From positions 1 through 64,000 of the IMG/VR virus record IMGVR_UViG_3300025319_000005: DNA of 64,000 nt, one strand, 5' to 3'. The notes beneath the pieces are model-generated. The model was not told the DNA's origin. It saw only the letters and a program-made list of their open reading frames with translations, and did no database searches. A program made the position numbers and the translations under genes. Shown piece by piece: positions 3,845-44,581 of the stretch; position 1 is the first letter of the stretch, and every line of letters starts with the position of its first letter.

Positions 3845-4264
3845 TTATGATTTGAAGTTGTATTTTAAATCTGTAGCATCAATTAATTTAAAAAATTTTT
3901 CATCAAAAGTTGAACGTCCAAAATATAATTTTTTTTTAGTTGTAAATTCTTTTAACTTTTCAATGTGCTTTATTCCATTTAAAAATTTGATCACTTCCGT
4001 ACGCTTCATTTTAAACTTTCTTTCAAAGCCAATCCATATTAAATCATCAAACCAAAATATATCACCATAGTCTAAATTTGGCTCTCTAATTTCATATTGA
4101 AACAGAATCTTACCAGCCTTAACATAAAAATAAAAGTTTGGATATTCTTCACATGTATTAATTTCACATCCTTCCAAAAACGAAAGAAAAAACACTTCCA
4201 TATCATTTTTTAGTGAGAATTTTTCAGTTAGTACTTTCCGAGTTATGGACAATTTTACTTTCAT
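3845..4264 (-). CDS. Family A paralog (MKxEL.ITRKVLxEK family), no array
   Basis: ITRKVLTEKFS...FFLSFLEGCEI...YPNFYFYVK...IW..FE.K shared with the array-bearing paralogs. Confidence 0.8.
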   Translation of the reverse strand: MKVKLSITRKVLTEKFSLKNDMEVFFLSFLEGCEINTCEEYPNFYFYVKAGKILFQYEIREPNLDYGDIFWFDDLIWIGFERKFKMKRTEVIKFLNGIKHIEKLKEFTTKKKLYFGRSTFDEKFFKLIDATDLKYNFKS

Positions 4265-5923: not shown

Positions 5924-6901
5924 ATGAAAAAAATAAGACAAATAATAAGAAAGTTTCTTTTTGAAGCACATGGAATTCAAATTAGCGTTCACGAATTTTC
6001 AAAAGAGATAGCAACTGATATGTTAGGTGTTATAGAAGATAATTTTATAAGAATGAATAATGGAAGAGAATGGAAATTTGAAGTAGATTTTCAGTCTCCA
6101 GAAACCATAAAAAAAGACACAAAAATAAATATAGTTAAAATTGGATTTACTTTTATTTCTTCTGAGGTGTTTAAGGTGAGTGGAAGTTTTGATCCAAATA
6201 GAACAGTGCTTTTAACTGATGATAATTATAATGTTTTTATAAAATTAGAAATAGAAACAAATACAATAGAAAACGTTTTACAACAAATAGAATCAGTTGT
6301 TTCGCATGAACTTAATCATGCATTTGTTCATATAAAAGGACTGTCAGGTAAATTAAAAGCAAAAAACTTAAATTACTCAAATAAATTCACACGAGGAGAA
6401 TTAAAAACCTTAATAGATAAAACTCCAGCACTTAAGGAATTTACAAAAATGATTTATATGGCAAATCCTTATGAAGTGCAATCAAGAGTGCAACAATCAG
6501 CGTTAGAACTTAAATATATAGACAAAAAAGAAGCAAAAGATACTATAGATGCACTACTTCAGTACGCACCATTAAGAGATGCTAAAATGATGATTTCTTA
6601 TAATTTGGATGAAATAAATAAAGTTGATGGCCAGATATTAGAAAATTTCGTTAAAAAGTTTAATGACAACATTAAGTCAGCTTCAAAAGAAGAAAATCCA
6701 AAAACAATTTATAAAGTAGATAAGTTTTTTGATTATTGGAAAGATGTAATAAATAATGCCGGCGATAAACTTGCAAGGAAAATATATAAAATTGTCGCAG
6801 ATAAACATCAAATACACGAGGGTTGTGTTTATGAATTAACGGATGGAGGAGCTTATAACATAATATTCGGAGAATCATACGGATATAATAGCCATGGCTA
6901 A
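5924..6901 (+). CDS. HExxH-containing protein, possible late/virion gene
   Basis: SHELNHA motif; one of only two credible + strand genes; two TATATTTAT boxes upstream. Confidence 0.5.
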   Translation: MKKIRQIIRKFLFEAHGIQISVHEFSKEIATDMLGVIEDNFIRMNNGREWKFEVDFQSPETIKKDTKINIVKIGFTFISSEVFKVSGSFDPNRTVLLTDDNYNVFIKLEIETNTIENVLQQIESVVSHELNHAFVHIKGLSGKLKAKNLNYSNKFTRGELKTLIDKTPALKEFTKMIYMANPYEVQSRVQQSALELKYIDKKEAKDTIDALLQYAPLRDAKMMISYNLDEINKVDGQILENFVKKFNDNIKSASKEENPKTIYKVDKFFDYWKDVINNAGDKLARKIYKIVADKHQIHEGCVYELTDGGAYNIIFGESYGYNSHG

Positions 6902-28661: not shown

Positions 28662-29087
28662 TCACTTAAAGTATATTTTTTTTGCCACTTTACCAAATGA
28701 TTTTTGTACTATACAAGATGTATAATCAGATATCAAGCCAACTTCTAATTCATCTAAATAAATACCGAATAGTAAACAAACATTTTCAACTTTAAAATTT
28801 TTATTAATAAGATTTTTTATAAAAGTTTGTATCTGCATATTTGATATTAAATATTTTTCTTTAAACATAAGCCATACTAAATTATATCTAACTCTAAAAA
28901 TATTTGGGACACATTCATATGTAAATAATATTTTATCATTTTTCAAATAAAAAATAGAGCCTGGATATGAATCTAATATTTTAATATCACATCCATCAAG
29001 AATTGAAAGAAAAAAATATTCTATTTCATTCTGAATAGAATATTTTTCAAACAATACTTTCCTAGTTATATGTAATTCTATTTTCAA
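28662..29087 (-). CDS. Family A paralog, no intact array
   Basis: MKIELHITRKVLFEK...FFLSILDGCDIK...YPGSIFY. Confidence 0.8.
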   Translation of the reverse strand: MKIELHITRKVLFEKYSIQNEIEYFFLSILDGCDIKILDSYPGSIFYLKNDKILFTYECVPNIFRVRYNLVWLMFKEKYLISNMQIQTFIKNLINKNFKVENVCLLFGIYLDELEVGLISDYTSCIVQKSFGKVAKKIYFK

Positions 29088-29089
29088 TA

Positions 29090-31084
29090 TTAAATGCCAC
29101 TTAAATTTTTAAATTTTGTTATCTCTGCCCAGTTATTTTCATCTAAATAATACTTTAAAGCTCTATTTTCCGTGTATTTTTCAACCAACACTCTACGGGT
29201 TTCTTTTCTCATTTGCTCTTTAAGACGTTGAGTATTATAGAATTCCTCATCTTTTCGCCAATATCCATATACACAGTAATCACAAGCACATTCATCATAT
29301 CGTTCTTTTGTACATGAAATAGCACTTATGCCATAACGTTTACCTTTTTTCATTTTATGAATTCCAAGGAAGCATAAAATCCTTCCTATTATTTGCAATA
29401 ATCTATTCATCATTTTTCGTAAATGTAACGTTTTCATCAACTATGTAATGAATTCTCAATAACTTCCCATCATCATGCACTGTATTAATACGTTTTAATG
29501 ATTTAACACGATTTTGCTGAAAAACATCAGAATAATCAGATATGTCGTATTTTTCTGGTTTTGATTTTTCTACCAACACTTTCCGGCGCTCTTTATTTAT
29601 TCTTGATTGGAATTTCATTAGATTATATCCATCTTCATCAGGAACCCATTCTGTATAATTAAACTTACCGCGAATACATACATCGTATCTATTATGTTTT
29701 GACCACGCGACACCTTTAAGCTTTTTGTGATAACCAAAAAAACATAAAATTTTGTTATACAAATATACTATTTTTTTCATTATATTTCTTAAATTTCGTA
29801 ATGATTCCAAGCTCTATTAATTCCGATTTTTCTTGCAAAACGCCTACTACTTTCTCTTGCTATTTCTTTAAAATCACCATTTATATGTTTGACACTTCGA
29901 CATTCATTATGCATCTTCTCAAATAATACCCGGCGAGTTTCATCTAAAGTCTGTATTTTAAATAACCAAAGTTTATATCCTTTATTGTCTTCTTTATAGC
30001 GAGAATAGGTACAGTTTTTACATACGTCATATCTCATTTCAGCACACCAAGAAATTCCTTTAATCATGTTATGGATACCATGATAACATAAAAACTTGTT
30101 CCAAAATTTATTAAACCGGCTTTTCATAATCCAATTAAAAATATTCTATTCTATTTGCTGTTTCTTTAAAGGATATTGCTCCAATAGATTTCATCGCTTC
30201 TTTATATTCCAAAAAAGATTTAATATCATCTTTCATTTTAGGAGCCTTTTCAAACAACACTCGTCTTTTCTCTTGAAATAATTTAAGCCTAAATTTTATT
30301 AATTTTGAATGTTCTAAATCAAGAACCCAATAACTAAATTTACAACCCTTACGCTTACAAGCATCATATCTCATATCGTTTGACCAGGTTATACCCTTTA
30401 CAATGTCGTGCTTTTCATAATGACATAAAATCATATAATATAAACTCTTGCCCCAAAGAAATATTTTAAAAAGTAGTTTTATCATGTTTTTTAATGATAA
30501 TCAATTTCCCAATCAGGTTCTTTAAATTTTTCAATTAAAACCTTTCTTGTTTCACGCTGTATTTGTTCTTGGTAAAGTATTAAATTATGCCCTTTAATAT
30601 CTAATTTCCAGAACGTTTTACCACATTTTATACATAAATCCTGTCTGGAGTGAATATACCAATAACAACCTTTCTGTATCTTATGAATACCAAAGAAACA
30701 TAAAATATTTTTTATGTTTAATCTATATAAAAAATTGATTCTCATATTTAAAATTTACCAACATATTTCCCATTCAGAACTTTCATTTAAACCTTGCATT
30801 TTTCTTACTTTTCTTAATATTATATCCTCGTTAATTTGTTTTACAAAAACACTTAATGAATTATCGGTTTTTTCAATTAACACTTTCCTGGTTTGCCTTT
30901 GTGCATTCACACTATACCAAAAAACCTCATATCCATCTTTATCAAATACGTATACCGGCATACCACAATGCTTACACATATCTTTTCTTTGAAATTCGCT
31001 ATTCCAAATATAACCTTTTTTAATATTATGTATGTTGAACCAATAGCACTTAATCCAAAGAAAAATATTTCGAATACGTTTCAT
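29090..31084 (-). CDS. Six tandem Cys/His-rich paralogs (LCFxGxH type) with the tag after the domain
   Basis: 29090, 29403, 29789, 30135, 30491 and 30755 share LC(F/Y)xGxH..KG..W...R.D.C..C followed by (T/R)R(K/R)VLxEK; a seventh, diverged copy at 32801-33184. Confidence 0.8.
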
Positions 31085-31092
31085 TATATGTT

Positions 31093-31605
31093 TTATATGT
31101 CAAATACAATATTTTCTGGAAAATCTTTTTCTATTAGAGTGTGCAATCCTAAATAATTATACTCTTCCCATTCTGATTGAGCCAATTTTGCACAAGGTGT
31201 ATATTCTTTTAATCTACAATTCTGAAATTCTTTTTCCAATGTTGAATTCGATTCAGTTAAACTTTCATCAAGTCCCTTCCAGCCAATATAAGGCATGTAA
31301 TTATTCAAATTAATGTAGTTATATATTATACTTTTTATAAACTCTTGAATTTCTTTATGAGCCATTTGATACTCTTTTTCAAAAACAAACCAGATCATTT
31401 TATACCTTACATAAAAATTCTTGGTTGCTGTTCCTTGTTGAAAAAATATAAAACCATCCTTTATATAAAAAATATTACCCGGATACATATCAGAAACTTT
31501 AAGCTCACATCCATCCAAAAAAGAAAGAAAAAACCCTTCCATATCACTTTTAATGGAAAACTTCTCCGTAAGGACTTTCCTGGTTATAATTAATTCTACT
31601 TTCAT
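31093..31605 (-). CDS. Family A paralog with eroded repeat remnants in the C-terminal tail
   Basis: INLNNYMP and RLKEYTP remnants of LETHxKLEGYTP. Confidence 0.75.
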   Translation of the reverse strand: MKVELIITRKVLTEKFSIKSDMEGFFLSFLDGCELKVSDMYPGNIFYIKDGFIFFQQGTATKNFYVRYKMIWFVFEKEYQMAHKEIQEFIKSIIYNYINLNNYMPYIGWKGLDESLTESNSTLEKEFQNCRLKEYTPCAKLAQSEWEEYNYLGLHTLIEKDFPENIVFDI

Positions 31606-31624: not shown

Positions 31625-31921
31625 GGTGTATAGCCTCTAATTTTATATATGTTTCCAACTTACCGCCTTTTTTACCTACAACAGCGTTTGGTGTATAGCC
31701 CTCTAATTTTATATGTGTTTCCAATTGCCACACAATAAGCACCTCATCAACTTGGGTGTATAGCCCTCTAATTTTATATGTGTTTCCAATCAGAAAGGGT
31801 TTTACTTTTTTGTGTAATGGGTGTATAGCCCTCTAATTTTATATGTGTTTCCAATTTAAAAAGGTGTACGGAATCACCAAAGCATGGTGTATAGCCCTCT
31901 AATTTTATATGTGTTTCCAAT
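31625..31921 (-). CRISPR. CRISPR-like array A: 5 repeats, 4 spacers, fused to the 3' end of gene 31774-32199
   Basis: Repeat ATTGGAAACACATATAAAATTAGAGGGCTATACACC at 31886, 31820, 31755, 31690 (identical) and 31625 (35 nt, degenerate); unique spacers of 30, 29, 29, 30 nt. Confidence 0.7.
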
Positions 31922-32199
31922 ATATCCTTTATAAACAATTGTGTTTCAGCATAGTTAAGCTCATATTTACTTTCAAAAACTGACCAAATCAAGTCATATT
32001 TAACCCAGAAATACCTATTTTTTAATTCCTGCTGAAATAAAATTAAGTCATTTTTTACATAAAAAACAAAATCCTGATACTTGTCTGAAATTTTAATTTC
32101 ACATCCCTCAAGAAAAGAAAGAAAAAATACATTCATTTCGTGTTTGATGTTAAATTTTTCAAACAACACTTTTCTTGTTATAATTAGTTCTATTTTCAT
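31774..32199 (-). CDS. Family A paralog reading into array A
   Basis: Ends ...LETHIKLEGYTP-CFGDSVHLFK-LETHIKLEGYTP-ITQKSKTLSDWKHI*. Confidence 0.85.
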   Translation of the reverse strand: MKIELIITRKVLFEKFNIKHEMNVFFLSFLEGCEIKISDKYQDFVFYVKNDLILFQQELKNRYFWVKYDLIWSVFESKYELNYAETQLFIKDILETHIKLEGYTPCFGDSVHLFKLETHIKLEGYTPITQKSKTLSDWKHI

Positions 32200-32217: not shown

Positions 32218-32520
32218 GGTGTATAGCCATCATCTAATTTTATATGCGTTTCCGGCTCGTTTTTGGTGTCATAAAAATAAAAATCAGGTGTATAGCCCTC
32301 TATTTTCACATGTGTTTCCAGCCCGTAAGCGTTATTTTTTGTATAAGCTGAAGGTATATAGCCCTCCAACTTTACATGTGTTTCCAATCAATTGCTATTT
32401 CTTTTATAAACATCAAACGGTATATAACCATCTGACTTTACGTGTGTTTCCAATTTTGTTGTGACGGCTAAGAGAGCAGCTGAAGGTGTGTAGTCTTCTA
32501 ATTTCACATGTGTTTCCAAC
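32218..32520 (-). CRISPR. CRISPR-like array B: 5 diverged repeats, four 30-nt spacers, at the 3' end of gene 32388-32819
   Basis: Repeats at 32485, 32419, 32353, 32287 (36 nt) and 32218 (39 nt, in-frame 3-nt insertion); translate as xETHxK(L/S/I)(E/D)(G/D)Y(T/I)P. Confidence 0.55.
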
Positions 32521-32819
32521 CTATCTTTTATAAAAGATTGAATATCATTATGGTTAAATTTGTATTTCATTTCAAAAACTGACCAAATTAAGTCATACCT
32601 TACATAAAAATGCCTATTTTTTATTTGCTGTTCGAATAAAATCAAGTCATTTTTTACATAAAAAATTGAATATATATATTTTTTACTTAATTTTATTTCA
32701 CATTCATCCACAAAAGAAAGAAAAAAATCTTCCATTTCGTGTTTTATGTTGAATTTCTCAAAAATAACTTTTCTGGTGATTATTAATTCTACTTTCATTT
32801 TTATCTTACCTTTTGACAA
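32388..32819 (-). CDS. Family A paralog reading into array B
   Basis: Stops at a TGA formed at the spacer2/repeat3 junction; track ORF 32196-32387 is the in-frame remainder of the array. Confidence 0.85.
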   Translation of the reverse strand: MSKGKIKMKVELIITRKVIFEKFNIKHEMEDFFLSFVDECEIKLSKKYIYSIFYVKNDLILFEQQIKNRHFYVRYDLIWSVFEMKYKFNHNDIQSFIKDRLETHVKLEDYTPSAALLAVTTKLETHVKSDGYIPFDVYKRNSN

Positions 32820-33152: not shown

Positions 33153-33311
33153 TTACCAAAAATTCCATTCATGACCTTTAACAATCCAATTAGGCATAGG
33201 AATGTATTTCTCTATAAGCACTTTTCTTGTATTTTCTGCTATAATTTTTATCTTTTTAGTTGCTTCAATTTCTTTTATTGAGCTATAAAATGGTGAACAT
33301 TTTCTTAACAT
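33153..33311 (-). CDS. 52-aa tagged microprotein (below track cutoff)
   Basis: MLRKCSPFYSSIKEIEATKKIKIIAENTRKVLIEKYIPMPNWIVKGHEWNFW*. Confidence 0.75.
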   Translation of the reverse strand: MLRKCSPFYSSIKEIEATKKIKIIAENTRKVLIEKYIPMPNWIVKGHEWNFW

Positions 33312-33332
33312 AGTTTTTTTAATTAGATGAAG

Positions 33333-33509
33333 TTAATTTATATACTTTTCTATTAACACTGTTCTGGTGTTCTCTTTTATAATTTTATTTCTTTCTATAA
33401 ATTCCATAATAAGTCTTTTCTTGAGCCTAAACTCTTCTATGCGTTTCAAAGAGGCTTCTTTGTTTGATTTTCTAAAATCTAACGAATTATAATATGAATT
33501 TTTTCCCAT
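33333..33509 (-). CDS. 58-aa tagged microprotein (below track cutoff)
   Basis: MGKNSYYNSLDFRK...IIKENTRTVLIEKYIN*. Confidence 0.75.
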   Translation of the reverse strand: MGKNSYYNSLDFRKSNKEASLKRIEEFRLKKRLIMEFIERNKIIKENTRTVLIEKYIN

Positions 33510-33524
33510 TGGATTTCTTATTTT

Positions 33525-33671
33525 TTAACTTTGCATTTTTTCTACCAGAACTTTACGAGTATTCTCTTCTAAAAATTCTTCTCTTAGTTTATTCTTTTTC
33601 CATTTGTATATCTCCGACCTCTTTTGAGCTGCATATTTCTGTTTATCAGGATTATAATTTCTTTGTTTCAT
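33525..33671 (-). CDS. 48-aa tagged microprotein (below track cutoff)
   Basis: MKQRNYNPDKQK...EFLEENTRKVLVEKMQS*. Confidence 0.75.
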   Translation of the reverse strand: MKQRNYNPDKQKYAAQKRSEIYKWKKNKLREEFLEENTRKVLVEKMQS

Positions 33672-33682
33672 TTATTTTCTTT

Positions 33683-33844
33683 TTAAAAATAAATTGAAAT
33701 CAATTTCCATTTTTCTATTAGGACTTTACGTGTGTTCTCTTCTATAAATTTTCTCTGAGCATGCCTTTCTTTAGCAATTTTTCTATAATATTCAATATAT
33801 TCATCAAAAGAAATATCAGAAGCGGTTTTAATTCCAGTTTTCAT
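33683..33844 (-). CDS. 53-aa tagged microprotein (below track cutoff)
   Basis: MKTGIKTASDISF...KFIEENTRKVLIEKWKLISIYF*. Confidence 0.75.
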   Translation of the reverse strand: MKTGIKTASDISFDEYIEYYRKIAKERHAQRKFIEENTRKVLIEKWKLISIYF

Positions 33845-34705
33845 ATAAATTTAATGTAATTTTTTTTTAATTTAAATTTTTCTATTAAAACCGTTCTCGT
33901 ATTCTCTTCTATGAATTTTTTCTGCTTTTCCTCTGCTTCTTTTTCAAATCTACACTTTTTTAACCATAAATAAGCTTCATCAGCTCTGGTTCTTCGTATC
34001 TGAGCATCGCTTTTTTCATTAGTGAACATGGTTGTAAAATATGCTATTTTTGGCTCTTCCATTTTTCTATAAGGACTTTACGTGTATTTTGAATTTTGTA
34101 CCAGGCTTTCTCATTTGGATAAATTGGAACCCATTCTAATATTTCTCCTTTAAATCTCAAATTCAATTCTCTTTCAGCTACACCCATAAGAAATAAAAAC
34201 TTATTTGTCAATTCTAATAATACAGGTTCATCAATTTCATCATCCCAACGAATAAACTCATAGTGCTTCTTACTAGTTTCAAATATGTACCGGTGATACC
34301 AATAAATATTTGACCAATGTTGTTGTGTTACCTGAGAAAATGGAATTTTAACCCCATCTTTAGTTGTCCAAACTTCCTCAAATACTCCAGCCTCAGTTTC
34401 TTCTAAAAACGGCTTATATTCGAATATCGTCTTTAAATTGTTTTCAACTTTTTCCATGACTTAATTCATTGTTATATCACTATACGAGAAATAATTGATA
34501 CGTGTTACAACTTTATTGGTATTCGACACAATTTTAGCAATTTTTGACTCAAATATGTTTTTTCTATTAAAACCCTCCTAATGTATATTATATCTGGCAC
34601 AGTCATCATTGCCCGACCGTACTTAATAATATCAAATGCCTCTTCTTCGCTTATTCTAAAACGAGCCAGCATCTCTTTTATCTCAAAATCATATAGATAC
34701 CTCAT
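33841..34705 (-). CDS. Three small proteins with C-terminal tag (33841-34062, 34044-34457, 34505-34705)
   Basis: EENTRTVLIEK, IQNTRKVLIEK, YIRRVLIEK. Confidence 0.75.
34473..34509 (-). promoter_or_regulatory. ECF-type phage promoter copy 14 (variant)
   Basis: TGTAAC-N17-CGTATAGTGATATA; the TAA of TGTAAC is the stop of ORF 34505-34705. Confidence 0.7.
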
Positions 34706-35210
34706 TTTTCTTTGAAAGTTCTTTAAATGATGTTGTAGCTAAATTTAAGCTAGAAGGATGATATTCACCTAAACTTTTAAATTCTATTATTTCTTTAGCA
34801 AGTATAAATGAACCTCTTACCGGCATACAATCATTTTTTATTTCATTTTCCAATATCATCCAATCTTTAGAATTCTTAATAGAACCCATTGAATATGGTG
34901 AATAACCATTAAGTTTTATACTGTTCTTTAGTAAACCTTTTATAAGTATTTGTGTTTTAGCATAGCTAAACCCAAATTTCATTTTAAAAACTGACCATAT
35001 GATGTCATATCTGACATAAAAAAACTTATATTTAATTTGTTGATGAAATAAAATCATATCTTCTTTTACATAAAAATAAAGCTCCGGATATTCTTTACTC
35101 GTTTTAATTTCACATCCTTCGATAAAAGACAGAAAAAACTCTTTTGCACCTTCTGTAGAAGAATATTTCTCGGTTAGGACTTTTCTCGTTATGACTAATT
35201 CTATTTTCAT
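34689..35210 (-). CDS. Family A paralog with a fossil 22-aa-period tail
   Basis: LKNSIKLNGYSP...ILENEIKNDCMP-10aa-IIEFKSLGEYHP-10aa. Confidence 0.75.
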   Translation of the reverse strand: MKIELVITRKVLTEKYSSTEGAKEFFLSFIEGCEIKTSKEYPELYFYVKEDMILFHQQIKYKFFYVRYDIIWSVFKMKFGFSYAKTQILIKGLLKNSIKLNGYSPYSMGSIKNSKDWMILENEIKNDCMPVRGSFILAKEIIEFKSLGEYHPSSLNLATTSFKELSKKNEVSI

Positions 35211-35767
35211 TTATCAAATAAGTTTATAGTGCTCCATAAATCACCAAGTATTACTGGTGTATAACCCTCCAATTTCACATGTGTTTCCAACAAAGATTTA
35301 GGACTAGGAAATACTTCTTTAGGTGTATAACCCTCCAATTTCACATGTGTTTCCAACCAAGCCCAGGATTGTATTGCACCACCAACAGGTGTATAACCCT
35401 CCAATTTCACATGTGTTTCCAACTTTTTTTGCAGAATATTAATTCTCCCAACAGGTGTATAACCCTCCAATTTCACATGTGTTTCCAACCTATCCTTTAT
35501 AAAAGATTGAATATCACTATAGTTAAGTTTATATTTGTTCTCAAAAACTGACCAAATTAAGTCAAATCTCATATAAAAATACTTAATTTTTGTTTCCTGT
35601 TCAAACAAAATCAAGTCATTTTTTACATAAAAAATAAAATTCGGGTATTTTTTACTTAATCTTATTTCACATCCATCAATAAAAGAAAGAAAAAAATCTT
35701 CCATTTCGTGTTCAATGTTAAATTTCTCAAAAATAACTTTTCTGGTTGGAATTAATTCTATATTCAT
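35207..35767 (-). CDS. Family A paralog fully translating array C
   Basis: Four exact LETHVKLEGYTP modules separated by unrelated 10-aa peptides. Confidence 0.9.
   Translation of the reverse strand: MNIELIPTRKVIFEKFNIEHEMEDFFLSFIDGCEIRLSKKYPNFIFYVKNDLILFEQETKIKYFYMRFDLIWSVFENKYKLNYSDIQSFIKDRLETHVKLEGYTPVGRINILQKKLETHVKLEGYTPVGGAIQSWAWLETHVKLEGYTPKEVFPSPKSLLETHVKLEGYTPVILGDLWSTINLFDK
35256..35489 (-). CRISPR. CRISPR-like array C: 4 identical 36-nt repeats, three 30-nt spacers, entirely inside the ORF
   Basis: GTTGGAAACACATGTGAAATTGGAGGGTTATACACC at 35454, 35388, 35322, 35256. Confidence 0.7.
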
Positions 35768-44029: not shown

Positions 44030-44581
44030 TTATTTGATTTGTAAAAAATTTGTGAGCACTGGATGGTCAAGGTTTGGTTTTACCAATTTTAGATGTGCGT
44101 TAGATAAACGACCCATTCTCCATTTACCAGCACCAGGTGTATAGTCCTTAAGTTTTATATTTGTTTCCGATATGTTTACACCATTACCAGAAGATGTATT
44201 TGGCGTGTATCCATTCAAATTTATAAGTGTTTCCAACGTTTGTGCCGCATTGGCGATTGGAATTATTGGTGTATATTCATCCAATCTTATATGTGTTTCT
44301 AATACGTCTTTTATAAACGACTGAGTTTTAGAATAACTAAATTTATATTTGTCCTCAAAAACCGACCAAATTAGATCGAATCTCACATAAAAATACCTGT
44401 TTTCTGTTTCCTGTTGAAATAATAATAAGTCATTTTTCACATAAAAAATATAATGTGGATGTTTGTCTGAAATTTTTAATTCACACCCCTCTATAAAAGA
44501 CAGGAAGAAATCCTCCATTTCGTGTTTGATGTGAAATTTCTCAAATAGGACTTTCCGAGTTATGGATAGGGTCGTTATCAT
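44030..44581 (-). CDS. Family A paralog translating degenerate array D
   Basis: LETHIRLDEYTP-10aa-LETLINLNGYTP-10aa-SETNIKLKDYTP-10aa; TACATTTG host promoter box upstream. Confidence 0.85.
   Translation of the reverse strand: MITTLSITRKVLFEKFHIKHEMEDFFLSFIEGCELKISDKHPHYIFYVKNDLLLFQQETENRYFYVRFDLIWSVFEDKYKFSYSKTQSFIKDVLETHIRLDEYTPIIPIANAAQTLETLINLNGYTPNTSSGNGVNISETNIKLKDYTPGAGKWRMGRLSNAHLKLVKPNLDHPVLTNFLQIK
44136..44303 (-). repeat. Degenerate CRISPR-like array D: 3 repeats, two 30-nt spacers, in frame
   Basis: 36-nt repeats at 44268, 44202, 44136 with an exact 66-nt period. Confidence 0.6.

What the first reader, a model, noticed from the sequence alone, without database searches (positions are those of the whole stretch)
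31625..31921. Array A shows CRISPR-like polarity, with the gene body in the leader position
Seen: the four gene-proximal repeats are identical and only the distal one is degenerate (1-nt deletion plus substitutions). Spacers in coding orientation: ATGCTTTGGTGATTCCGTACACCTTTTTAA, CATTACACAAAAAAGTAAAACCCTTTCTG (29), CAAGTTGATGAGGTGCTTATTGTGTGGCA (29, 45% GC, well above the window), AAACGCTGTTGTAGGTAAAAAAGGCGGTAA. The 29-nt spacers break the frame, so the distal half is untranslated but its repeats stay intact. Established: trailer-end repeats degenerate and new spacers enter at the leader end. Inference: growth occurs at the gene side from foreign DNA, and repeats are maintained at the nucleic-acid level.
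Basis: partly seen in the sequence, partly recalled or inferred. Interest (0 to 1): 0.8.

Follow-up and report, generated by a model that had tools for sequence, protein, structure and literature searches.

The report
Gene-fused CRISPR-like arrays in phage
In a 503-kb phage, the last 36 bases of several small genes are repeated downstream with unique 30-base inserts, and related phages add new inserts at the gene end as CRISPR arrays do. No cas genes lie nearby and the usual leader is replaced by a conserved protein-coding gene, which I have not seen described.

Summary
Four identical 35-nt repeats and one degenerate distal copy lie at 31625-31920 on the minus strand, with start-to-start periods 66, 65, 65 and 65-66. 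Seven independent assemblies give the same sequence, so the 29-nt spacers are real.

Array A is one of four arrays (A-D) in the window. Each starts inside the 3' end of a paralogous small gene, and the first repeat encodes the last 12 residues (LETHIKLEGYTP) of a confidently folded ~105-aa domain.

About 25 related arrays from other huge-phage contigs show CRISPR hallmarks:
- spacers of 29-32 nt, with 30 nt in 69% of cases;
- identical repeats continuing past frameshifts and stop codons;
- a degenerate terminal repeat;
- in five strain comparisons, different gene-proximal spacers but shared distal ones, inside otherwise 97-98% identical DNA.

Synonymous sites of the first repeat (TTG, ACA) barely vary, so it is constrained as both protein and nucleic acid.

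Evidence against a canonical CRISPR locus:
- no cas gene within 2.5-10 kb of any array;
- no protospacer found;
- no consensus repeat fold;
- no matching host array;
- some lineages keep diverged arrays strictly in frame, even as polyproteins.

Best reading: CRISPR-type arrays whose leader is a gene (confidence about 0.55).

The parts
31774..32199 (-). Gene A, 141 aa. It has the conserved N-terminal domain (about residues 1-105), whose last 12 codons are repeat 1. The ORF runs on through spacer 1, repeat 2 and spacer 2 and stops inside repeat 3.
   Evidence: (P0004)
31625..31921 (-). Array A. Repeats R1 31886-31920, R2 31820-31854, R3 31755-31789 and R4 31690-31724 are identical. R5 31625-31658 is degenerate. 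Spacers lie between the 35-nt cores at 31855-31885, 31790-31819, 31725-31754 and 31659-31689.
   Evidence: identical in 7 assemblies
32388..32819 (-). Gene B, a paralogue. The ORF ends at an in-frame TGA at the end of spacer 2 of array B.
   Evidence: P0002
32221..32519 (-). Array B: five diverged repeats, all with period 66. The last has a 3-nt insertion. Differences between repeats fall mostly on third codon positions.
35207..35767 (-). Gene C, 186 aa. It reads in frame through all four repeats and three spacers of array C. AlphaFold gives pLDDT >90 over about residues 20-100, still about 85 through the first repeat (residues 94-105), and <50 from residue 114 on.
35256..35488 (-). Array C: four identical repeats with period 66. 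They differ from the array A repeat at four positions, three of them synonymous and one Ile/Val.
   Evidence: a 2-repeat variant exists in another sample (L043/P0001)
44030..44581 (-). Gene D, a paralogue of 183 aa.
   Evidence: P0003; P0008 is a variant lacking one unit
44136..44302 (-). Array D: three diverged repeats with period 66, in frame.
31093..31605 (-). Paralogue without an array. It keeps a single degenerate copy of the repeat peptide (NYINLNNYMP).
34689..35210 (-). Paralogue without an array. It keeps a single degenerate copy of the repeat peptide (NSIKLNGYSP).
28662..29087 (-). Paralogue without an array.
   Evidence: hhalign probability 98.6%
3845..4264 (-). Paralogue without an array.
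   Evidence: hhalign probability 98.5%

Best explanation
Array A and its sisters B-D are CRISPR-type spacer arrays carried by a huge phage (RIF_PHAGE_CU_29_17, 503 kb, Rifle sediment). A conserved small protein-coding gene takes the place of the leader, and the last 36 bp of that gene is the first repeat. Proposed mechanism: transcription of the gene runs on into the array. A Cas1-Cas2-type integrase acting in trans inserts 29-32-bp spacers at the junction between gene body and first repeat and duplicates that repeat. Older units are pushed distally, where the last repeat decays. Because 36+30 = 66 = 22 codons, most insertions keep the frame and the ORF often reads on into the array. A 29-nt spacer breaks the frame, as in array A. 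The transcripts presumably yield about 66-nt guide RNAs for a trans-encoded effector used in conflicts with other mobile elements. Shown here: the architecture, the spacer-length distribution, the polarity of turnover in relatives, the terminal-repeat decay, and the dual (protein plus nucleotide) constraint on the first repeat. Inferred: the integrase, transcription and processing, the effector, the targets and the biological role.
For: Architecture: 35/36-nt direct repeats separated by unrelated spacers. Across 65 unique spacers the lengths are 45x30, 15x29, 3x31 and 2x32 nt. Independence from translation: in the 53 spacers from relatives, stops in the repeat frame (16/53) are as frequent as in one control frame (17/53), and the other four control frames have 17-27/53. 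31% of periods are not multiples of 3. Repeats downstream of such breaks remain 100% identical, for example L013, L032, L041 and window A. Polarity: L017 and L023 show 0-1 mismatch per 66 nt in the flanks and share the two distal spacers, but differ at 25-26 positions per 66-nt block, almost all within the 30-nt spacer, in the two gene-proximal units. L019 and L021 have their single spacer replaced. Spacer sets are nested in L018/P0036, P0011 and L027, and in L029 and L032. Six contigs share one locus and tail but have 11 different spacers. Terminal-repeat decay: 8/13 arrays for the last repeat against 2/13 for the first. Nucleotide-level constraint: the Thr codon of the repeat is ACA in 22/22 variants against 51% genome usage, and the first codon is TTG in 18 against 16% usage. 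Spacers are richer in GC than their genomes in 17/22 loci. The source genome is listed with Cas1 and Cas2 in Al-Shayeb et al. 2020, Table S1 (PMC7162821). That paper also reports compact phage arrays lacking adjacent cas genes.
Against: No cas gene lies in the 64-kb window (Pfam and PADLOC) or within 2.5-10 kb of about 25 related arrays. The phage's 'Cas14K' is a TnpB-like gene beside an ISL3 transposase, with no array and no anti-repeat nearby. I could not locate cas1 or cas2. No protospacer turned up in INPHARED (arrays A+B only), in IMG/VR (exact 24-mers of 3 spacers) or in the loci held (all spacers). The repeat has no consensus RNA fold and no Rfam CRISPR-DR match. No bacterial genome among 185,579 species representatives carries the repeat pattern as an array. 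Every array is tied to one protein family of 1,728 clusters. Some members keep diverged arrays strictly in frame, with indels in whole codons, even as 3-5-module polyproteins. In the window's own arrays 11 of 12 spacers lack stops in the repeat frame (p about 0.03), and divergence in array B is biased to third codon positions. Array A itself shows no variation among the available samples.
Confidence: 0.55

Rival explanations
1. The array is a purely protein-coding tandem repeat. A 12-residue conserved motif (LETHIKLEGYTP) alternates with 10-residue hypervariable linkers at the C-terminus of a phage protein. Possible forms are a processed polyprotein, a multi-core peptide precursor or a variable binding tail. 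Variation arises by cassette exchange, and array A is a decaying copy.
For: The period is 66 nt, or 22 codons, in arrays B, C and D and in 69% of all units. Gene C reads through its whole array. The first repeat is part of a confidently predicted domain. Divergence in array B is biased to third codon positions. 11 of 12 window spacers lack stops in frame. Polyproteins P0088, P0096 and P0090 and the six-repeat ORFs P0150 and P0173 are in frame, with a 60-nt unit in P0088.
Against: 31% of units break the frame and about 30% of relatives' spacers carry in-frame stops, no fewer than in one control frame. Yet downstream repeats remain identical, and such arrays persist across samples (L013, L014 and L015). 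Whole 30-nt segments are replaced between 97-98% identical genomes, and only at the gene-proximal end. Synonymous sites of the repeat barely vary. The repeat region after the first copy is predicted disordered. In L073 most differences between repeats are non-synonymous. The in-frame examples were found through a protein database, which selects for open arrays.
Confidence: 0.2
2. The arrays are by-products or decoys. The 3' end of the gene mimics a host CRISPR repeat. Either host Cas1-Cas2 integrates spacers there ectopically ('neo-CRISPR' formation), or the repeat RNA serves as an anti-CRISPR decoy. In both cases the spacers have no guiding function for the phage.
For: No cas genes lie near any array. 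No protospacers were found. Arrays are short, 2-5 repeats. Ectopic integration and repeat-mimicking RNA anti-CRISPRs are known phenomena (from my own knowledge, not tested here).
Against: No bacterial array with this repeat pattern exists among 185,579 species representatives, so no host repeat being mimicked was found, though the pattern was strict. The gene-array linkage is conserved, with co-diverging repeats, across a family only 30-45% identical in protein sequence, which argues for selection and against accident.
Confidence: 0.12
3. It is an assembly or sequencing artefact: collapsed or indel-ridden repeats, with true spacers all 30 nt.
For: The array is a short-read assembly of a repeat. 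Spacer 2 contains an A6 run.
Against: The sequence is identical in seven independent assemblies and in Logan contigs of further runs. Spacer 3 has no homopolymer. 29-nt spacers are common in unrelated arrays of the family.
Confidence: 0.01

Closest known systems
Compact CRISPR arrays on huge phages lacking adjacent cas genes (Al-Shayeb et al. 2020, PMC7162821)
   Same: They are phage-borne and short (median six repeats in that study), often lack Cas1/Cas2 or an effector nearby, and are proposed to work with Cas proteins supplied in trans against competing elements. The source genome of this window belongs to that data set and is listed there as CRISPR-Cas positive.
   Different: Here the leader is a conserved protein-coding gene and the first repeat is its last 12 codons. 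Several paralogous gene-array modules occur per genome. The repeat pattern was not found in any bacterial genome scanned. These repeat sequences do not occur in that paper's held supplementary files.
Type VI-B (Cas13b) arrays
   Same: A 36-nt repeat plus a 30-nt spacer gives a 66-nt unit. The repeat starts GTTG. The hosts are Bacteroidetes, which is the host phylum predicted for this phage.
   Different: The defining complementary GUUG/CAAC ends, the U-rich loop and the conserved fold are absent. The repeats end in ACACC, have an A-rich centre and show no consensus structure. No cas13b lies nearby. My initial impression of sequence similarity came from memory and could not be checked with data.
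Unstructured, tracrRNA-dependent repeats (type II, V-F/Cas14)
   Same: The repeats are 36 nt and unstructured, with about 30-nt spacers. The genome is listed with a Cas14K (type V) gene.
   Different: No anti-repeat longer than chance (15 nt or less) occurs in the window or beside the Cas14K gene. That gene looks like a TnpB in an IS context without an array.
Virus-borne mini-CRISPR arrays, solitary repeat units and spontaneous 'neo-CRISPR' arrays (own knowledge)
   Same: These are short arrays on mobile elements without cas genes. A repeat-like sequence seeds array growth through integration next to it.
   Different: Those use the host's own repeat, and none is described as an integral, conserved part of a protein-coding gene family.
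Multi-core peptide precursors with hypervariable cassettes, e.g. cyanobactin PatE (own knowledge)
   Same: A long conserved N-terminal part is followed by repeated conserved recognition sequences. These flank short hypervariable segments that differ completely between otherwise near-identical genes.
   Different: Such precursors stay in frame and free of stops, whereas here a third of units break the frame or carry stops. No modifying enzymes were seen nearby.
TIGR-Tas and VIPR arrays (PMC12385481; bioRxiv 10.64898/2026.10.15.759431)
   Same: They are phage-associated, non-canonical guide arrays.
   Different: TIGR uses dual short spacers and Nop-domain Tas proteins. VIPR uses GGYNN 5-nt units plus a 40-nt tail. 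Neither matches a 36-nt repeat with a continuous 30-nt spacer, and no Nop-domain hit appeared among the family hits listed for the window's ORFs.

Membership tests
CRISPR array | Near-identical direct repeats of about 23-50 nt | tested here: met
   Four identical 35-mers in A and in C. In most related arrays the repeats differ from the array consensus at 0-1 positions.
CRISPR array | Unique spacers of nearly constant length, not tied to codon multiples | tested here: met
   65 unique spacers: 30 nt x45, 29 x15, 31 x3, 32 x2. No spacer similarity within or between arrays except in orthologous arrays.
CRISPR array | Polarised growth at the leader end, with older spacers shared between strains at the far end | tested here: met
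   Met in five comparisons among relatives. For array A itself it is inconclusive, because all copies are identical.
CRISPR array | Degenerate terminal repeat | tested here: met
   Seen in window A, L009, L016, L019/L021, L031 and L041. The last repeat is uniquely the most divergent in 8/13 arrays.
CRISPR array | Associated cas genes (adaptation and/or effector) | tested here: not met
   None in the window or within 2.5-10 kb of related arrays. Cas1 and Cas2 elsewhere in the genome are reported only in the literature and could not be located or linked.
CRISPR array | Spacers match foreign protospacers | tested here: inconclusive
   No match in INPHARED (arrays A+B), in IMG/VR exact 24-mers (3 spacers) or in the held loci. 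The search was very limited and same-site metagenomes were not searchable.
CRISPR array | Non-coding AT-rich leader upstream of the first repeat | tested here: not met
   The upstream sequence is a conserved ORF of a family with 1,728 clusters. The first repeat lies inside its folded domain.
CRISPR array | Transcription and processing into unit-length guide RNAs | not testable with these tools
   Only DNA runs held the sequence and only as contigs. No RNA data were laid.
Type VI-B (Cas13b) direct repeat | 35-36-nt repeat with complementary GUUG/CAAC ends, a U-rich loop and a conserved fold (PMC11662929) | tested here: not met
   The length and 5' GTTG are met. The 3' end is ACACC, the MFE is -0.5 kcal/mol (z +1.1), and RNAalifold predicts no consensus pairs over 24 variants.
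Protein tandem-repeat domain | Every unit in frame and free of stops, with indels in whole codons | tested here: not met
   Met for window arrays B (apart from one in-frame TGA), C and D and for P0088, P0150 and P0173. Not met overall: 20/65 units are out of frame and 16/53 relatives' spacers carry stops.
Protein tandem-repeat domain | Repeats form a predicted structure | tested here: not met
   pLDDT is <50 from residue 114 of gene C onwards, while residues about 20-100 are >90 and the first repeat (94-105) still about 85.
TIGR-Tas / VIPR | Dual short spacers with a Nop-domain protein, or GGYNN units with a 40-nt tail and a Vipr protein | tested here: not met
   The unit is a 36-nt repeat plus one 30-nt spacer, and no such domains appeared among the family hits listed for the window's ORFs.

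The most novel reading that the evidence does not exclude
This may be a phage-specific adaptive array system distinct from canonical CRISPR-Cas. A roughly 105-aa protein family and the 3' end of its own gene would act together as leader and first repeat, so each module's repeat co-evolves with its protein. Spacer integration and guide use would depend on phage-encoded or still unknown factors rather than on a host CRISPR locus. Translation into the array and RNA processing could be coupled, for example if processing creates non-stop mRNAs. Phage SmpB and tmRNA genes sit next to the arrays in several relatives.
Probability: 0.25. Interest if true: 0.9.

Novelty: new variant of a known kind. Interest (0 to 1): 0.75.

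Why it matters
If these are working spacer arrays, they show that a CRISPR-type repeat can be dual-coded as part of a protein, and that a gene can serve as leader. Array finders routinely discard arrays inside ORFs as false positives, so a whole class of phage-borne arrays may have been filtered out of surveys. The family is large (1,728 protein clusters) and appears confined to phage-like contigs. None of the roughly 25 arrays examined here has an adjacent cas gene. It therefore offers a concrete system for asking how cas-less arrays on viruses acquire and use spacers, and whether unknown machinery does this. If the protein-only reading is right instead, the family is an unusual case of cassette-like hypervariability in phage proteins.

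Tried and rejected
- Stop-codon reassignment. Treating TGA or TAG as sense adds little ORF length on the coding strand, so the in-frame TGA in array B is an ordinary stop.
- Programmed -1 frameshifting at the 29-nt spacers. The A6 run in spacer 2 is not in the X_XXY_YYZ register, and spacer 3 has no slippery site (read from the sequence).
- Rfam. No family hit at gathering score in the window, and no CRISPR-DR hit at E<=10 on arrays A+B or at E<=1 on 12 related loci.
- Known protein families or folds for the gene. Pfam, PHROGs, a PDB profile search and Foldseek against PDB and BFVD gave nothing significant. ESM Atlas gave only weak leads.
- Homologous DNA in 50,697 phage records: none.
- Host arrays. 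A strict repeat pattern in 185,579 bacterial and archaeal genomes gave one chance hit inside a peptidase gene. A relaxed pattern in JGI metagenomes returned only the source contig.
- Protospacers: none.
- Link to the phage's Cas14K. The locus was fetched with a fragment of the published Cas14K1 sequence. It is TnpB-like beside an ISL3 transposase, with no array and no anti-repeat.
- A consensus hairpin or covariation in the repeat: none.
- Gradient in the base preceding each repeat. I dropped this as a polarity argument after one search showed the first repeats of B and C are preceded by G.
- Promoter and terminator scans were uninformative.
- One search was a mistyped pattern, one position short, and wasted one viral scan. 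One search corrected it and added only two new contigs.
- Read laying could use only Logan contigs, which break at the repeats. One apparent 198-nt skip in array C may be a graph artefact.

Full report
**What is there**

The window has 29.6% GC and almost all its genes lie on the minus strand. It comes from RIF_PHAGE_CU_29_17, a 503,412-bp huge phage from Rifle sediment (NCBI CACVIJ010000001.1). A 212-kb IMG/VR contig is identical over the part compared.

At 31625-31920 on the minus strand, four exact copies of a 35-nt sequence are followed by a fifth copy with a 1-nt deletion and substitutions. Start-to-start distances are 66, 65, 65 and 65-66. ORF 31774-32199 reads through repeat 1, spacer 1, repeat 2 and spacer 2 and stops in repeat 3, because spacer 2 is one base short.

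The 2-kb region is identical in seven independent assemblies. Contigs from four further runs show no differences.

**Context in the window**

Array A is one of four arrays:
- Array A, 31625-31920: four identical repeats plus a degenerate fifth.
- Array B, 32221-32519: five diverged repeats.
- Array C, 35256-35488: four identical repeats, differing from A's repeat at four mostly synonymous positions.
- Array D, 44136-44302: three diverged repeats.

Each begins inside the 3' end of a paralogous gene on the same strand. Four more paralogues lack arrays: 3845-4264, 28662-29087, 31093-31605 and 34689-35210. Two of these (31093-31605 and 34689-35210) visibly keep a single degenerate copy of the repeat peptide.

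The repeat reads LETHIKLEGYTP in the gene's frame. Arrays B, C and D have an exact 66-nt (22-codon) period, and gene C reads through its entire array. AlphaFold2 with a 44-sequence alignment gives pLDDT >90 over about residues 20-100 and about 85 across the first repeat (residues 94-105). It gives <50 for everything after residue 114.

The protein has no Pfam, PHROG, PDB or BFVD relative. No cas gene, reverse transcriptase or Nop-domain protein appeared among the family hits listed for the window's ORFs. The window does encode a tyrosine recombinase, a ligase, methyltransferases, a sigma factor and a helicase.

**Relatives**

A word-indexed protein search gave 87 homologues. An exhaustive profile search gave 1,728 clusters at E<=1e-3.

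Homologues only 35-45% identical end in the same kind of structure, WLEETLKLEGYTP plus 10 variable residues, repeated. Several predicted proteins end in out-of-frame translations of the next repeat (WKRLSN*, GRDSQIRGLYT), exactly as gene A does.

I fetched 31 IMG/VR loci plus ENA contigs and extracted the arrays at the DNA level. The true unit is a 36-nt repeat, consensus GTTGGAAGAG...ACACC, plus a spacer.

**Evidence for behaviour at the nucleic-acid level, like CRISPR**

1. Spacer lengths. Among 65 unique spacers, 45 are 30 nt, 15 are 29 nt, 3 are 31 nt and 2 are 32 nt. So 31% of units break the frame.
2. Stop codons. In the 53 spacers from relatives, stops in the repeat-defined frame (16) are as frequent as in one control frame (17), and the other four control frames have 17-27.
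3. Repeats downstream of stops or frameshifts are still 100% identical to the first repeat, for example in L013, L032, L041 and window A. Such arrays recur in different samples (L013, L014 and L015).
4. Terminal decay. The last repeat is uniquely the most divergent in 8 of 13 informative arrays, the first in 2.
5. Polarity:
   - L017 and L023 are 97.7% identical over 4 kb. Their flanks and the two distal units show 0-1 mismatch per 66 nt. The two gene-proximal units differ at 25-26 positions per 66-nt block, almost all within the 30-nt spacer, while the repeats are kept.
   - L019 and L021 differ in their single spacer.
   - L018/P0036, P0011 and L027 form a nested series that shares the distal spacers.
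   - L029 and L032 share only the distal spacer and the tail.
   - Six contigs share the LEETYNLKGLTP locus and tail but hold 11 different spacers.
6. Synonymous sites. Across 22 distinct first repeats, third codon positions are the most variable (entropy 0.97 against 0.60-0.67). Even so, the Thr codon is always ACA (51% usage in this genome), and the first codon is TTG in 18 of 22 (16% usage). The motifs TGGAA and ACACC persist in lineages of 43-46% GC. The first repeat is therefore constrained both as protein and as nucleic acid.
7. Spacers are on average 4.5 GC points richer than their loci, and richer in 17 of 22 loci.

**Evidence that does not fit a canonical CRISPR locus**

- No cas gene lies within 2.5-10 kb of any array. 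The recurrent neighbours are SmpB, methyltransferases and nucleases.
- Al-Shayeb et al. (PMC7162821, Table S1) list this genome as having Cas1, Cas2 and Cas14K (type V). I could not locate cas1 or cas2.
- The Cas14K locus was fetched with a fragment of the published protein. It is a TnpB-like gene next to an ISL3 transposase, with no array and no anti-repeat.
- No protospacer was found, though the search was small.
- The repeat has no stable or conserved fold and no Rfam match.
- My first lead, resemblance to Cas13b repeats, came from memory. It fails the published defining features, which are complementary GUUG/CAAC ends and a U-rich loop.
- A strict repeat pattern found no array in 185,579 bacterial species genomes.

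**The coding layer**

Some family members keep diverged arrays strictly in frame. P0150 and P0173 have six repeats. P0088, P0096 and P0090 are polyproteins of three to five [domain + 2-3 repeats] modules in one ORF, and P0088 includes a 60-nt unit.

In the window, 11 of 12 spacers lack stops in the repeat frame, against 2-8 with stops in control frames (p about 0.03). Differences between array B repeats are biased to third positions.

These examples were found through a protein database, which favours open arrays. In L073 most differences between repeats are non-synonymous. Even so, the polyproteins show that translation through old arrays matters in some lineages.

**Interpretation**

The pattern of whole-spacer replacement confined to the gene-proximal end, inside otherwise near-identical genomes, is best explained by CRISPR-type integration. 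So are the indifference to frame and stops and the decay of the terminal repeat. Integration would occur at the junction of gene body and first repeat, with the gene acting as leader.

Because 36+30 nt equals 22 codons, most insertions leave the ORF open. This explains the protein-like look of arrays B-D. It also allows old, inactive arrays to be kept as coding sequence.

Third-position differences among the repeats of an old array are also expected if each downstream repeat is a copy of the coding-constrained first repeat taken at a different time. Array A looks young, since its repeats are identical, and it has two 29-nt spacers. Its distal half is untranslated yet intact.

I put about 0.55 on this reading. 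A purely protein-level repeat gets about 0.2, a by-product or decoy about 0.12, and an artefact about 0.01. The integrase, effector, targets and role remain unknown.

**Novelty**

Compact phage arrays without nearby cas genes are known. In the searched literature I found no description of arrays whose leader and first repeat are a conserved protein-coding gene, nor of this family. TIGR and VIPR arrays are built differently. I rate the finding as a new variant of a known kind. There is a real chance, about 0.25, that it is a distinct phage-specific system.

Noticed in passing
window, minus strand, 25 sites between 4243 and 44560 (e.g. 26261, 29200, 30550, 33230, 33733, 34085, 36851, 37948): The peptide motif [T/S/I]R[K/R]V[L/I/V]xEK occurs 25 times on the minus strand and never on the plus strand. 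It lies about 8-16 residues from the N-terminus of at least four unrelated small-protein families, including the array family. It lies near the C-terminus of others. Codons differ between copies, so the motif is conserved as peptide and not as DNA. It might be a shared targeting or protease-cleavage tag: L-x-E resembles T4 prohead-protease sites, but that comparison is from memory.
   Followed up: partly
window 29090-31084 (-): Six tandem paralogues of a Cys-rich small protein of about 84-135 aa (…CFFGIHK…KG…RYDVC…), most ending with the TRKVLIEK-type motif.
   Followed up: no
window 33153-34705 (-): A run of very small ORFs of 48-73 aa. Each ends in EENTRKVLIEK a few codons before its stop, like a second, longer-period repeat of gene ends.
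   Followed up: no
L013, L019, L026-L028, L034 (about 0.4-1 kb downstream of the arrays); L044-L046; L016:1-252: Phage-encoded SmpB lies just downstream of the gene-array module in at least six related loci. A tmRNA (Rfam E=3e-7, cut by the locus end) lies 1.7 kb upstream in L016. This may be coincidence of synteny, or it may relate to non-stop mRNAs if the array transcript is cleaved.
   Followed up: partly
L051:9470-10949 (IMG/VR contig from the same sample as the window's phage): The 'Cas14K' of this phage lineage is a 405-aa TnpB-like protein (OrfB_IS605 plus a Cas12f1-like TNB domain). A 2x45-nt tandem repeat and an ISL3 transposase follow it, and no CRISPR array lies nearby.
   Followed up: partly
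P0088 (L072:4001-6283), P0096, P0090: In other phage-like contigs of 43% GC the family occurs as single ORFs of three to five [domain + 2-3 repeats] modules. The same junction peptide (…EVVP|QDSKPEPFDSE…) recurs between modules.
   Followed up: partly
window 35256-35453 versus L043 and run X12: Array C has shorter variants elsewhere. An ENA scaffold has two repeats, keeping the proximal spacer and the tail. One Logan contig skips 198 nt, or three units, which may be a de Bruijn graph artefact.
   Followed up: partly
window 5924-6901 (+): This is the only sizeable plus-strand ORF (325 aa) in an otherwise minus-strand window. One member of the scanned ORF set matches the phage-integrase (tyrosine recombinase) family, but I did not check which ORF it is.
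   Followed up: no
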